Below are positions 1,288 to 3,941 of a stretch of DNA of 39,953 nucleotides, piece after piece. Origin of the DNA: Octopus bimaculoides. Taxonomy: Eukaryota. A program made the position numbers and the translations under genes. Positions within the stretch are counted from its first letter, which is position 1; each line of letters opens with the position of its first letter. Below the pieces are notes generated by a model. It ran no database searches. It was not told the origin of the DNA and saw nothing but the letters and a program-made list of their open reading frames with translations. The stretch lies in the NCBI RefSeq assembly GCF_001194135.2, contig NC_069004.1:35891794-35931746 (forward strand), given 5' to 3'.

Positions 1288-2876
1288 ATGTGTGGTCAGA
1301 AGACATTGTCAATTGCGATCCTCTGTCTGTTCGTCGTTGTATCAAGTGTATTTGGTGAAAATTTGAACGCCTCAGTTCCAGGTATTCCCGAAAATACCGA
1401 GCAAGCTACCACACTTAGTACAACAGTGGAACCTTTACTGCAAACCACTGCTGAAATACAGTACTCTTCTGCACAGGACCATCACGAGAAGCAGCGGGAT
1501 GAGTTTCACACAAACACAACGCCGGACTTTCCACTATTTCCGAGAAAGGAAGATTCGCGACAGTTTTGGAACGACCATCCACAATTCAAAGGAGTTCCAG
1601 ACTTGCCAGCCAATTCGACAAATTATCCCGCGTGGTTGATAAAGCTGATGTCTCAAGACAAACCATTAAAGCCCACCAGCAGAACACACAGCCAAGATCA
1701 GTCGCCATCATTTCTTCGAAATGATCGATTTGTCGATGCTGATCAGCAACACCAACAAAGCTTCGATCATCCCATTGAAGACGGTCGATTTATGCATCTA
1801 CCTGCACGAGAGTCTCATGCAAGAAGACAATGGTTCAGGCCGGATGACACTAGAAATGAACAACCAATATTTCTATATCCCGTACAAAGTGTTCAACCCG
1901 TCGAGATATTCCAACTCAATTCCGCGGTTGTTCCAAATCGGAATTTAATGTGGCGTCCAGCAGCTGAGAGAGTGGAAAATACCGAAATACAAAGATATCC
2001 CCCAGTTTTTGATCGCTTAAATTTTAACAGAGAATTTCGAGCGAAACAATATTATCCTGGTAGAGAAAACAATGGTTTTGAAAGTCTGCAACAAGCAGCA
2101 TTCGAAAACAGTGTGGATCGTAATTCTCATCCTTATCAGAGAAATGTACCAATCATTCTGGCAAAAAGTGGAAATCTTCAGCTGAACCAAAATCCAAATT
2201 TTAGAAATAAATTAGTTGTCTTTTCAGTAGAACCTGTATTGAAAAGAGATCTTATTGCGCCACCGCGGCGAACGAAGCGTCAAACAAGAGGTATCTATAG
2301 AGAACCGCCACGTCTTCGAGAATTTGTTGATAATAAACCAAAAAACTTATTACCAAAACGCAAATGGCCGGGGAAAGAAAACTCTTTCAGATTTAATGAT
2401 TTCCAACTTGAGAATCGATGGGCTCCATTTTTCTCACCCACAAATTTTGTTGAACGTCAAAAAATTCCTATTGTGGTAGTAAAATTGGACAAAAGCGCAG
2501 GAGCAGAAGCGTCAGGAAATAACCAAAGAGATGGGACTGAAATGACGAGAAGACAATATCCAAAGCAATCGAATTTCTTGTTTGTTGGCGGTGGACCTTG
2601 GATGCCGGGTCAATGGTCAACGGCTGACGAACAATCACAGAATACGCCCGCCGCCGCCGACTATTCACGAAGATTTGACGGAAATATTTTCTTCGAAAGA
2701 TTTCCTTATCCTCGAAGTCGAAACAATAAAGACAGATTAGGAAATTCTCCGAAACAACTAAATCGCCACGAAATAGTCAACAATGCTAAAAGCGACCATT
2801 TCCATAGAAACCACCCAAATAATGGAAATAATAATTTTTCATCTCAAAATTTGAAGAATGATAACTTTTCACACCT
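1288..2876 (+). CDS. Unrecognised secreted protein, N-terminal part (529 codons up to the assembly gap); signal peptide MCGQKTLSIAILCLFVVVSSVFG, low-complexity N/Q/R/P/F-rich mature region
   Basis: Uninterrupted 1589-nt ORF in AT-rich DNA. ATG at 1288 lies 13 nt after a good acceptor (tatattctttccag, AG at 1273-1274). N-terminus is K plus a hydrophobic core plus a VFG|E cleavage-like site. No family recognised. Confidence 0.85.
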
Positions 2877-3427
2877 NNNNNNNNNNNNNNNNNNNNNNNN
2901 NNNNNNNNNNNNNNNNNNNNNNNNNNNNNNNNNNNNNNNNNNNNNNNNNNNNNNNNNNNNNNNNNNNNNNNNNNNNNNNNNNNNNNNNNNNNNNNNNNNN
3001 NNNNNNNNNNNNNNNNNNNNNNNNNNNNNNNNNNNNNNNNNNNNNNNNNNNNNNNNNNNNNNNNNNNNNNNNNNNNNNNNNNNNNNNNNNNNNNNNNNNN
3101 NNNNNNNNNNNNNNNNNNNNNNNNNNNNNNNNNNNNNNNNNNNNNNNNNNNNNNNNNNNNNNNNNNNNNNNNNNNNNNNNNNNNNNNNNNNNNNNNNNNN
3201 NNNNNNNNNNNNNNNNNNNNNNNNNNNNNNNNNNNNNNNNNNNNNNNNNNNNNNNNNNNNNNNNNNNNNNNNNNNNNNNNNNNNNNNNNNNNNNNNNNNN
3301 NNNNNNNNNNNNNNNNNNNNNNNNNNNNNNNNNNNNNNNNNNNNNNNNNNNNNNNNNNNNNNNNNNNNNNNNNNNNNNNNNNNNNNNNNNNNNNNNNNNN
3401 NNNNNNNNNNNNNNNNNNNNNNNNNNN
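2877..3427. other. Assembly gap (551 N) inside the orphan CDS; other gaps at 19459-19473, 24473-24948, 25574-25661 and 29548-30164
   Basis: N runs. Confidence 1.
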
Positions 3428-3428
3428 T

Positions 3429-3941
3429 AATACAGCTGATACTGAAGATGCTGTTTCTCATCAAATGGCATTCCATTCCAATAATTTCTTAGCCAGACAT
3501 GAAGGTTTCAATCTTGACCGCTTCGGGAAAACTTTCAGTTTCCACGAGGGCAAAATGAAGCAACAACTGCGGAAGGACATAGCAGAAGTTGAAAATCAAA
3601 GACACTGGTTCGAATCTTTTCCTTATCCAGATTGGAGAAAATCAATTGGGGGCGGACTTCTGGACGAGATTCATAGATCAACGAACAACTGGGACATTGG
3701 CGGTTTTAGGAACCATCCTCGAAAGCAGTGGGCATCAAAGTCCTCCATTCCGGTGGTAACAATCCCTAGAGCAAATCCTAAGCAGATATCGTACACAGCA
3801 CGATATCGGTACAGGTTCGGTATCTACCCGGGGTACACTGATTACAAACCGAACATCGACAGCCACAAAGTTTATTACGAGTATGACCCCCACTACCAGA
3901 CCGCACCGAATACTTTTCTACCTTTCCGAACCTATCAGTAA
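3429..3941 (+). CDS. Same unrecognised secreted protein, C-terminal part (NTADTEDAVSHQMAFHSNNF...TFLPFRTYQ*, 170 aa)
   Basis: Frame is open from the gap edge (AAT at 3429) to TAA at 3939-3941. Composition matches the upstream part and it shares the FE[RS]FPYP motif. The frame offset across the 551 N is attributed to an estimated gap size or a hidden intron (inference). Confidence 0.8.
   Translation, partial: NTADTEDAVSHQMAFHSNNFLARHEGFNLDRFGKTFSFHEGKMKQQLRKDIAEVENQRHWFESFPYPDWRKSIGGGLLDEIHRSTNNWDIGGFRNHPRKQWASKSSIPVVTIPRANPKQISYTARYRYRFGIYPGYTDYKPNIDSHKVYYEYDPHYQTAPNTFLPFRTYQ

What the first reader, a model, noticed from the sequence alone, without database searches (positions are those of the whole stretch)
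1288..3941. Unrecognised secreted, cysteine-free protein encoded by a very large exon
Seen in sequence: a clear signal peptide, at least 699 aa, and no Cys in the visible mature region. It has N-glycosylation sequons (NAS, NTT, NST, NFS), a Thr/Ser-rich stretch after the signal, and N/Q/R/P/F-biased, disorder-like composition. One coding exon is at least 1.6 kb, beside a housekeeping gene whose exons are 62-197 nt. Established: cephalopods carry many lineage-restricted secreted structural and gland proteins, often in one large coding exon. Inference: this is a taxon-restricted secreted precursor or matrix protein that I cannot place in any family.
Basis: partly seen in the sequence, partly recalled or inferred. 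Interest (0 to 1): 0.75.

Follow-up and report, generated by a model that had tools for sequence, protein, structure and literature searches.

The report
Coleoid-only secreted disordered proprotein gene
This is a real octopus gene for a large secreted protein with almost no cysteine and probably no fixed fold, which has relatives only in other octopuses and cuttlefish and an unknown function, so it is an ordinary lineage-restricted "orphan" gene.

Summary
Window 1288-2876 (529 codons) and 3429-3941 (170 codons plus stop) are two pieces of one gene. Both are collinear with Octopus sinensis XP_036368640.1 (LOC118767721), at 83-86% and 92-94% amino-acid identity.

In the O. sinensis genome the whole coding sequence lies in one uninterrupted exon. 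The stretch matching the window's gap is an open 534-nt frame. The two window pieces join in frame if the N-run is 26 nt too long.

The ORF is maintained by selection:
- Substitutions are fewer than in the flanks.
- All 5 indels are multiples of three, against 7 of 28 in the flanks.
- dN/dS is 0.68 in the first piece and 0.28 in the second.

A distant relative of 1043-1047 aa exists in Sepia. It is spliced and transcribed in larvae, and it has the same layout of a 5'-UTR exon plus one giant coding exon. Octopus and Sepia share five features:
- the signal peptide;
- a roughly 45-aa N-terminal block;
- two furin-type sites;
- an aromatic, Arg-rich C-terminal tail of about 60 aa;
- an almost cysteine-free mature chain.

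There is no Pfam or PDB match and no confident AlphaFold model. My best reading is a coleoid-restricted secreted proprotein cleaved by a convertase, probably a matrix or secretion component. Its function is untested, and interest is modest.

The parts
1261..1274 (+). Polypyrimidine tract and splice acceptor (tatattctttccAG) of the large exon. The exon starts at 1275.
   Evidence: The O. sinensis and O. vulgaris gene models both join their different upstream exons exactly here (...T/Q|IFPMCGQK). Upstream exon 1 of the O. sinensis model (L001 10001-~10094) lies about 1 kb before the point that aligns with window base 3, so it is outside the window. Sepia has the same layout, with an acceptor 60 nt upstream of the ATG; genomic contig L020 and mRNA L016 diverge exactly at ...TTTCCAG|.
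1275..1287 (+). A 13-nt 5'-UTR segment at the start of the large exon.
   Evidence: It lies between the acceptor and the first in-frame ATG. There is no ATG further upstream in frame within the window.
1288..1356 (+). Start codon and predicted 23-aa signal peptide MCGQKTLSIAILCLFVVVSSVFG.
   Evidence: It is the only strongly hydrophobic stretch in the protein. It is conserved in O. sinensis. Sepia has MSLLVSCLIWALLSSASG at the true N-terminus, with an in-frame stop 2 codons upstream.
1288..2876 (+). Coding sequence, part 1: 529 complete codons plus the start of codon 530 (ct-, Leu). It runs into the assembly gap.
   Evidence: Translation. It is 83-86% identical to O. sinensis P0001 residues 35-579. 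dN/dS is 0.675, and all 4 indels are multiples of 3.
1522..1650 (+). Conserved N-terminal block (aa 79-121): PDFPLFPRKEDSRQFWNDHPQFKGVPDLPANSTNYPAWLIKLM.
   Evidence: This is one of only two segments that align significantly between Octopus and Sepia (BLASTP E 6e-14). It holds the only non-signal helix that AlphaFold gives any confidence, at pLDDT about 60.
2266..2280 (+). Furin-type site R-R-T-K-R|Q (aa 327-331).
   Evidence: RRTKRQ is present in the window and in O. sinensis. Sepia has ARTKRQ or ARNKRQ. R-x-[KR]-R occurs 2-3 times per protein against 0.5-0.6 expected from shuffles.
2877..3427 (.). Assembly gap of 551 N that hides about 171-175 codons of the same exon.
   Evidence: The O. sinensis equivalent, L001 15032-15565, is a 534-nt open frame. 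It is K/S-rich and carries two Cys and the site RKKR|D.
3429..3941 (+). Coding sequence, part 2: 170 codons plus the TAA stop.
   Evidence: Translation. It is 92-94% identical to the C-terminus of P0001. dN/dS is 0.28, and Fisher p = 0.0075 for dN < dS.
3759..3938 (+). Conserved C-terminal tail (last 60 aa): TIPRANPKQISYTARYRYRFGIYPGYTDYKPNIDSHKVYYEYDPHYQTAPNTFLPFRTYQ.
   Evidence: This is the best-conserved segment of the family, with E 2e-20 against Sepia. It is what the HMMER scan picked up in P0002 at 58% identity. It has 11 Tyr, 3 Phe and 5 Arg in 60 residues; four of the Tyr are Phe in Sepia. It has the lowest dN/dS in the Sepia pair, 0.22.

Best explanation
**Shown.** Window 1275-3941 is the single large coding exon of a genuine protein-coding gene of about 870 aa. 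The exon is interrupted only by an assembly gap. The gene is orthologous to Octopus sinensis LOC118767721 and belongs to a family found so far only in coleoid cephalopods (Octopus and Sepia). It is transcribed and spliced in cuttlefish larvae. It lies tail-to-tail with CSE1L.

**Shown from sequence.** The product starts with a signal peptide and has no other hydrophobic segment. It has almost no Cys, is basic (pI 9.5-10) and hydrophilic, and is rich in N, P, Q, R and F. It gets no confident fold.

**Inferred mechanism.**
- The protein enters the secretory pathway and is N-glycosylated near its N-terminus.
- Furin-like proprotein convertases cut it at two positionally conserved R-x-K/R-R sites. 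The first is RRTKR|Q at aa 331. The second, RKKR|D, lies inside the window's gap, about 190 aa before the C-terminus.
- Cleavage releases an acidic N-fragment carrying the conserved FW.DHP...PDLPA...YP.WL block, a fast-evolving basic disordered middle, and a C-fragment ending in the conserved aromatic/Arg-rich tail.
- I think the conserved end modules most likely mediate binding or self-assembly in an extracellular matrix or secreted material shared by octopus and cuttlefish hatchlings. Candidates are the cuticle, beak, radula or sucker lining, or a gland secretion. The middle would act as a disordered spacer.

Confidence that this is a real secreted coleoid-restricted protein is about 0.9. 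The figure of 0.45 applies to the full statement, including cleavage and a matrix or secretion role.
For: **Orthology and continuity.**. Residues 19-926 of P0001 map to one uninterrupted stretch of the O. sinensis chromosome.

**Selection.**
- Mismatch is 6.5% and 3.9% in the two coding parts, against 8.6-19% in the flanks.
- 5 of 5 coding indels are multiples of three, against 7 of 28 in the flanks.
- Only 1.1% of simulations with the same number of random substitutions keep the ORF open.
- dN/dS is 0.68 and 0.28.

**Sepia family members.**

**Sample identity.** The SRR runs are Sepia esculenta larva or juvenile RNA-seq (PMC9538352, PMC10141105, PMC10571815).

**Splicing and single coding exon in Sepia.** Genomic L020 against mRNA L016 is 99.97% identical from a CAG acceptor onward.

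**Purifying selection in Sepia.** Omega is 0.33 overall and 0.22 in the tail.

**Conserved blocks and furin sites.**

**No fold and no family.** AlphaFold mean pLDDT is 37 for the C-terminal 170 aa and 29 for the full length. Pfam and PDB gave nothing.

**No second hydrophobic segment.**
Against: - No tissue-level expression data could be reached, only whole larvae or whole animals.
- Cleavage is predicted from motifs only.
- The low AlphaFold confidence comes from alignments of 3-4 sequences, so it is weak evidence of disorder.
- dN/dS of the first part (0.68) is not significantly below 1 on its own (Fisher p = 0.068).
- No repeats or Gly/His/Ala-rich modules typical of known cephalopod structural proteins were found.
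- The O. sinensis RefSeq model starts 34 aa upstream, in an exon that lies outside the window. That would bury the signal sequence if it were real.
- Absence outside coleoids is inconclusive. Squid and Nautilus may be poorly represented in the databases searched, and only short terminal blocks are detectable at that distance.
Confidence: 0.45

Rival explanations
1. It is a neuroendocrine, pheromone or other bioactive-peptide precursor, in the style of granin or VGF. Convertases would release the conserved N-terminal and C-terminal peptides as signalling molecules, and the long variable middle would be a sorting or spacer region.
For: It has a signal peptide and a long, Cys-poor, apparently disordered chain. 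Only the termini are conserved. It has positionally conserved R-x-K/R-R sites. Sepia has GRR just upstream of the conserved tail.
Against: - The protein is basic (pI 9.5-10), whereas granins are acidic (my knowledge).
- Dibasic pairs are at chance level: 9 observed against 9.6 expected, 21 against 16.5, and 13 against 12.9.
- No G-[KR][KR] amidation signal is conserved: 0 in Octopus.
- The conserved sites are of the furin type associated with the constitutive pathway (my knowledge), not simple KR or RR pairs.
- The transcript is abundant enough in whole larvae to assemble at full length in at least 63 runs.
Confidence: 0.2
2. The real start codon lies in an upstream exon, as in the O. sinensis model with its 34-aa extension. 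The hydrophobic segment would then be an internal signal-anchor, making a type II membrane protein rather than a secreted one.
For: XP_036368640.1 begins MPTKFLYTRTYK... in an exon about 3.3 kb upstream and reads in frame into IFPMCGQK.
Against: - The O. vulgaris model joins a completely different, gag-like sequence to the same acceptor. This suggests that upstream ORF extension is an annotation artefact.
- In Sepia the homologous Met is unambiguous, with an in-frame TAA 2 codons upstream in the mRNA, and the signal peptide sits at the very N-terminus.
- The in-frame window sequence upstream of 1288 contains no ATG and runs into a (CT)n microsatellite.
Confidence: 0.05
3. The two halves are not one exon. 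The gap would hide an intron, a mis-join or a disrupted frame, so the window would carry a pseudogene or two separate ORFs.
For: With 551 N as written, the two frames differ by 2 nt.
Against: - N-run lengths are estimates.
- Both flanks map collinearly, and on codon boundaries, to one continuous ORF in O. sinensis. The interval there is 534 nt, against 560 nt in the window.
- The flanks are syntenic.
- The C-terminal part is under clear purifying selection.
Confidence: 0.03
4. It is a chance or transposon-derived ORF and not a functional host gene.
For: No known domain was found. The surrounding region is rich in repeats and reverse-transcriptase fragments.
Against: - The ORF is conserved, spliced and transcribed in lineages as distant as Octopus and Sepia.
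- Its indels are in frame, its substitution rate is lower than in the flanks, and dN/dS is below 1.
- There is one copy in the 26-kb O. sinensis locus.
Confidence: 0.02

Closest known systems
Octopus sinensis uncharacterized protein LOC118767721 (XP_036368640.1, UniRef A0A7E6FMJ4), and Octopus vulgaris CAI9740451.1
   Same: These are the orthologues. They are collinear over both visible parts, at 83-86% and 92-94% aa identity. They share the acceptor, the single coding exon, the signal peptide, the RRTKR site and the C-terminal tail, and their flanks are syntenic.
   Different: The species differ (dS about 0.09). The database models carry N-terminal extensions that are probably artefacts: 34 aa in O. 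sinensis and a 188-aa gag-like piece in O. vulgaris. Neither protein has any functional annotation.
Sepia 1043-1047-aa homologue (P0004, P0005, P0011, P0018; unannotated Logan transcript and genome contigs of S. esculenta and two other Sepia lineages)
   Same: It shares the signal peptide, the N-block, the R-[TN]-K-R|Q and R-x-K-R|D sites, the C-terminal tail, a Cys-free mature chain, a basic N/P/Q-rich composition, and the layout of a 5'-UTR exon plus one coding exon.
   Different: Overall identity is only about 28%. It is 150-175 aa longer. It is richer in Pro (12.5%) and has His clusters. It has a third furin-type site (RQKR|L).
Vertebrate P/Q-rich secretory calcium-binding phosphoproteins (amelogenin, enamelin, ameloblastin). 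Analogy only, from my own knowledge.
   Same: These are secreted, essentially Cys-free and intrinsically disordered. Their conserved terminal modules include a Tyr-rich one and flank a fast-evolving P/Q-rich core. They are processed by proteolysis and act by self-assembly in an extracellular matrix.
   Different: There is no detectable sequence similarity. S-x-E kinase motifs are not enriched: 1-3 observed against 2-4 expected. The protein is basic, not acidic or phosphorylated. The exon structure is different, and so is the phylum.
Granin or VGF-type neuroendocrine precursors. Analogy only, from my own knowledge.
   Same: They are long, Cys-poor, disordered secretory proteins whose termini are the conserved parts, and they are cut by proprotein convertases.
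   Different: Granins are acidic and have many dibasic sites. This protein has pI 9.5-10, dibasic pairs at chance frequency, and no conserved amidation signal.
Cephalopod and mollusc structural or adhesive proteins (suckerins, histidine-rich beak proteins, mussel foot proteins). Analogy only, from my own knowledge.
   Same: They are secreted, lineage-restricted and aromatic/Arg/His-containing. This protein is conserved in two taxa that share a beak, a radula and sucker linings.
   Different: It has no modular repeats (self-BLAST empty). Gly is 4-5%, His 3.5-4% and Ala 3-5%. Four Tyr of the tail are Phe in Sepia, which argues against a tail whose function depends on DOPA or Tyr cross-linking.

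Membership tests
Orthologue group of O. sinensis LOC118767721 (coleoid orphan family) | Collinear full-length similarity on both sides of the gap | tested here: met
   Part 1 matches P0001 residues 35-579 at 83-86% identity. Part 2 matches residues 757-926 at 92-94%.
Orthologue group of O. sinensis LOC118767721 (coleoid orphan family) | Same genomic context and exon structure | tested here: met
   The flanks align collinearly: window 3-1066, 3996-5035 and 6240-7791 against L001. The acceptor is the same, and the coding sequence is a single exon.
Orthologue group of O. sinensis LOC118767721 (coleoid orphan family) | Conserved N-block, furin-type sites and C-terminal tail shared with Sepia | tested here: met
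   The N-block, RRTKR|Q and the tail are visible in the window. The second site (RKKR|D) falls in the gap and cannot be seen.
Any Pfam family, including R&R chitin-binding (Chitin_bind_4) | Profile match at or near the gathering score | tested here: not met
   No family has E < 0.05. The best hits, DUF7284 (E 0.19) and Ribosomal_L37 (E 0.051), are far below their cut-offs.
Granin or prohormone precursors | Acidic protein with enriched dibasic sites and amidation (G-K/R-K/R) signals flanking conserved peptides | tested here: not met
   pI is 9.5-10. Dibasic counts equal the shuffle expectation. There is no G[KR][KR] in Octopus, and none is conserved.
Granin or prohormone precursors | Expression in neurons or endocrine cells and storage in dense-core granules | not testable with these tools
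   Only whole-larva and whole-animal RNA-seq assemblies were reachable.
SCPP / enamel-matrix-type proteins | Sequence homology, S-x-E phosphorylation motifs and acidic or Ca-binding character | tested here: not met
   There are no Pfam or PDB hits. S-x-E is at or below chance, and the pI is basic.
Suckerin, His-rich beak protein or mussel-foot-protein-type structural proteins | Tandem modular repeats with a strong Gly/His/Ala/Tyr bias | tested here: not met
   Self-comparison found no internal repeats. Composition is G 4-5%, H 3.5-4%, A 3-5%, Y 1.7-3%.
Furin / proprotein-convertase substrates (functional class) | Entry into the secretory pathway plus an accessible R-x-K/R-R motif | tested here: met
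   The protein has a signal peptide. RRTKR|Q is conserved between Octopus and Sepia. The motif occurs 2-3 times against 0.5-0.6 expected.
Furin / proprotein-convertase substrates (functional class) | Demonstrated cleavage | not testable with these tools
   This needs expression of the protein, or proteomics.

The most novel reading that the evidence does not exclude
The gene founds a previously undescribed protein family that spans coleoid cephalopods and may be a coleoid innovation. The family is defined by a conserved N-terminal block, two convertase sites and an aromatic/Arg-rich C-terminal tail, all carried on a cysteine-free disordered chain. Its processed fragments would form a specific component of a coleoid structure such as the beak, radula or sucker cuticle, a larval organ or a gland secretion, or they would act as new signalling peptides.
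Probability: 0.3. Interest if true: 0.5.

Novelty: new member of a known kind. Interest (0 to 1): 0.3.

Why it matters
Cephalopod genomes hold many lineage-restricted genes that are thought to underlie their special tissues, and few of them have been characterised. This one is unusually tractable:
- It has a single coding exon and is robustly expressed in cuttlefish larvae.
- It is conserved between Octopus and Sepia.
- It has clear conserved modules and predicted cleavage sites that can be tested directly.

If its tissue of expression proved to be a coleoid-specific structure, it would add a new building block or signal to that structure. As the evidence stands, it is one more uncharacterised orphan gene. 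It is already present in RefSeq as a 'LOC' entry, and nothing about it contradicts current expectations.

Tried and rejected
- **Pfam** scans of the window protein, P0001 and P0004 at E up to 10 gave nothing usable.
- **PDB** sequence search with P0001 and with the Octopus+Sepia profile gave nothing. The Abraxas-2 hit at E 0.017 covers a predicted helix and is not credible.
- **Profile search** of the 5.8-billion-protein set with alignment A2 returned only P0001.
- **AlphaFold2** on the C-terminal 170 aa and on the full-length orthologue gave mean pLDDT of 37 and 29. I did not run a fold search because the matches would be meaningless.
- **Literature searches** for the LOC id, the protein accessions and conserved peptide strings found no papers.
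- **Tissue specificity** from SRA run identifiers could not be obtained. The runs resolve only to whole larvae or juveniles (S. esculenta), or to a series that includes a whole-animal S. pharaonis run. The ERR runs could not be assigned to a species.
- **A possible 103-nt retained intron** to explain the frameshift in Sepia contigs L002 and L003 was considered and rejected. Intact contigs differ only by A6 versus A7 in a homopolymer.
- **Reflectin, suckerin, beak-protein, mussel-foot-protein, SCPP and granin membership** were each considered. Composition, motifs or the lack of repeats ruled each one out.
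Full report
**1. What is in the sequence**

An ATG at 1288 opens a frame of 529 codons that runs into the N-run starting at 2877. On the other side, a different frame is open from 3429 to a TAA at 3939-3941, giving 170 codons.

The first 23 residues, MCGQKTLSIAILCLFVVVSSVFG, look like a signal peptide and are the only strongly hydrophobic stretch. The two Cys residues lie inside this peptide. The 676 visible mature residues contain none, which has a probability of 1e-3 to 1e-6 at ordinary Cys frequencies.

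The composition is N 10%, P 9%, R 9%, Q 7% and F 7%. Their number (5) equals the shuffle expectation (5.0), and dibasic pairs are also at chance level.

Fourteen bases upstream of the ATG there is a polypyrimidine tract ending in AG (1261-1274). A 76-nt (CT)n microsatellite precedes it.

**2. The gap**

As written, 2875 to 3429 is 554 nt, so the two frames disagree by 2 nt. A search of 5.8 billion proteins found one homologue, Octopus sinensis XP_036368640.1 (LOC118767721, 926 aa). An O. vulgaris model sits in the same 90% cluster.

Both window parts align collinearly with this protein. Part 1 matches residues 35-579 and part 2 matches residues 757-926.

I fetched the O. sinensis chromosome segment as L001. 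There, residues 19-926 map to one uninterrupted stretch, 13349-16072. Window 2874 aligns to L001 15031 and window 3435 to L001 15566. Both are codon starts of the same frame, and the interval is 534 nt in O. sinensis against 560 nt in the window.

If the N-run is 26 nt too long, the window's two halves are in frame. The hidden segment, about 171 aa in O. sinensis, is rich in K and S. It contains two Cys (TCLSNCS) and an RKKR|D site. 'Cysteine-free' is therefore shown only for the visible part.

**3. Is it a maintained gene?**

Against O. sinensis the evidence is:
- Mismatch is 6.5% in part 1 and 3.9% in part 2, against 8.6-19% in three flanking segments.
- All 5 coding indels are multiples of three, against 7 of 28 in the flanks.
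- Only 1.1% of simulations that place the observed 102 substitutions at random keep the ORF open.
- Nei-Gojobori dN/dS is 0.675 for part 1 (dS 0.091; Fisher p = 0.068) and 0.279 for part 2 (p = 0.0075).

So the C-terminal part is clearly constrained. The larger N-terminal and middle part evolves fast but keeps its frame.

**4. A distant relative, with transcript evidence**

A full HMMER scan of 1.84 billion cluster representatives with the O. sinensis protein found only one further protein. This was a 66-aa fragment, 58% identical to the last 60 residues. It sits on 3.4-4.3-kb Logan contigs next to an 848-aa ORF.

Searching with that ORF gave an intact 1047-aa protein, P0004, with 25 near-identical variants. 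One variant is seen in 63 assemblies.

The run accessions are Sepia esculenta larva or juvenile RNA-seq (PMC9538352, PMC10141105, PMC10571815). A 1043-aa variant comes from SRR3011302. That run belongs to a series in which SRR3011300 is listed as whole-animal S. pharaonis (PMC5541922), so the species assignment is an inference.

A contig from a different library of the same species (L020, ERR3431203) is 99.97% identical to that mRNA from a ...TTTCCAG| acceptor 60 nt upstream of the ATG onward, and unrelated before it. This shows three things:
- The Sepia mRNA is spliced.
- The whole 3.1-kb coding sequence is one exon.
- The layout of a 5'-UTR exon plus one giant coding exon is shared with Octopus.

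The Sepia ATG has an in-frame TAA two codons upstream. That fixes the signal peptide at the true N-terminus. It also argues that the 34-aa extension of the O. sinensis model and the gag-like extension of the O. vulgaris model, both joined at the same acceptor, are annotation artefacts.

Between two Sepia lineages, dN/dS is 0.33 overall and 0.22 in the C-terminal tail.

**5. Anatomy of the family**

Octopus and Sepia are only about 28% identical overall. Pairwise BLAST is significant in just two places: the N-terminus (E 6e-14) and the C-terminal tail (E 2e-20). There are no internal repeats.

The shared features are:
- the signal peptide, with sequons and a Thr-rich stretch just after it;
- the block PDFxxFPxxxxxxQFWxDHPxxKxxPDLPAxxTxYPxWLxxxM (window aa 79-121);
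- R-[RA]-[TN]-K-R|Q in mid-protein (window aa 327-331);
- R-[KQ]-K-R|D about 185-195 aa before the C-terminus (inside the window's gap);
- the tail PRANPxQxSYTARxRYRFGIYPGYxDYxP..D.H....YD..H....P....PFRxY.

R-x-[KR]-R occurs 2-3 times per protein against 0.5-0.6 expected. The mature chain has 0 Cys in all 16 Sepia variants. The pI is 9.5 in Octopus and 10.0 in Sepia, and GRAVY is about -1. Four of the tail's eleven Tyr are Phe in Sepia.

**6. Fold and family**

Pfam gave nothing and PDB gave nothing.

AlphaFold2 with the 3-4 available sequences gives mean pLDDT of 37 for the C-terminal 170 aa and 29 for the full length. Only the signal helix and a short helix in the N-block reach pLDDT 50-60. 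This fits an intrinsically disordered protein, but the alignments are shallow, so it is weak evidence.

**7. Context**

On the minus strand, short exons match the following families in order. These are IBN_N (35.6-35.9 kb), Cse1 (30.5-30.8 and 26.8-27.1 kb) and CAS_CSE1 (19.1-19.4, 17.1-17.3, 13.1-13.4 and 11.4-11.6 kb). The start Met is near 37290 and the last coding ORF ends near 9028. CSE1L therefore converges on this gene, with about 5 kb between the two stop codons.

**8. Interpretation**

Shown: a real, single-coding-exon gene, transcribed in Sepia, encoding a protein with a signal peptide, restricted so far to Octopus and Sepia.

Inferred: secretion, N-glycosylation and furin-type cleavage into three fragments, with the function residing in the conserved N-block and the aromatic/Arg-rich tail.

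I favour an extracellular matrix or secretion role (0.45 for the full statement). My reasons are:
- the sites are of the furin type;
- the protein is basic and large;
- dibasic sites are not enriched and no amidation signal is conserved;
- the transcript is abundant in whole larvae.

A prohormone or pheromone precursor is the main rival (0.2). Mis-assembly, a pseudogene, a chance ORF and a membrane-anchored form are each unlikely.

The closest analogies are vertebrate P/Q-rich enamel-matrix proteins and granins. Both are resemblances in architecture only, recalled from my own knowledge, and membership fails on every feature I could test.

**9. Verdict**

The gene is already in RefSeq as an uncharacterised LOC entry.

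What this analysis adds:
- continuity across the gap;
- the Sepia relatives and their transcript evidence;
- the conserved gene structure;
- the conserved modules and cleavage sites.

This is a tidy orphan-gene case of modest interest (0.3). The species of the window is an Octopus other than O. sinensis or O. vulgaris (dS about 0.09), probably O. bimaculoides, but I could not test that.

Noticed in passing
window 4002-4275: A long imperfect inverted repeat begins about 60 nt after the stop codon. Its nested arms are 4002-4043/4234-4275, 4022-4078/4188-4244 and 4081-4118/4153-4190, at 84-88% complementarity. It is MITE-like or hairpin-forming. It is also present at the orthologous place in O. 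sinensis (L001 16826-17098, which aligns in both orientations).
   Followed up: partly
window 12061-12399 (+), 6926-7261 (-), 20530-20655 (-): Reverse-transcriptase fragments of non-LTR retroelement type (...YADDLAL...). The one at 12061-12399 matches Pfam RVT_1 (E 7e-8) and sits inside a CSE1L intron. The one at 6926-7261 lies between the two genes.
   Followed up: partly
window 9025-37292, minus strand: A complete or nearly complete CSE1L (exportin-2) gene with many short exons. Matches to IBN_N, Cse1 and CAS_CSE1 appear in order. It is convergent with the finding's gene.
   Followed up: partly
window 19459-19473, 24473-24948, 25574-25661, 29548-30164: Four further assembly gaps, all inside the CSE1L gene span. 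Some CSE1L exons may be hidden in them.
   Followed up: no
window 1132-1207; also 102-125, 197-226, 4320-4355: A (CT)38 microsatellite lies about 55 nt upstream of the splice acceptor of the large exon. There are also (TG)n and (TA)n runs. The CT run reads as a long poly-Leu/Ser 'ORF' extension in mechanical ORF lists (the 800-aa TTG ORF).
   Followed up: no
L002 2632-2654 and L003 2634-2656, against L004/L005 2630 and L006 2662: Three Sepia esculenta transcript contigs carry A7 instead of A6 in a homopolymer. This splits the ORF into an 848-aa product and a separately called 66-aa C-terminal piece. It could be a polymorphism, transcriptional slippage or an assembly error. It is the reason the HMMER scan saw only a 66-aa hit.
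   Followed up: partly
P0003 (O. vulgaris CAI9740451.1) residues 1-188; P0001 residues 1-34: The database gene models attach unrelated N-termini to this gene at the same acceptor. In O. vulgaris it is a gag-like retroelement piece, and in O. sinensis it is a 34-aa exon 3.3 kb upstream. Both are probably annotation artefacts that would mask the signal peptide in automated predictions.
   Followed up: partly
L001 12044-13111 against window about 1066; L001 about 16142-16776 against window about 4008: O. sinensis has about 1 kb of extra sequence in the intron just upstream of the large exon, and a block of about 560-630 nt just downstream of the stop. Neither is present in the window. They are lineage-specific insertions or deletions, probably repeats.
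   Followed up: no
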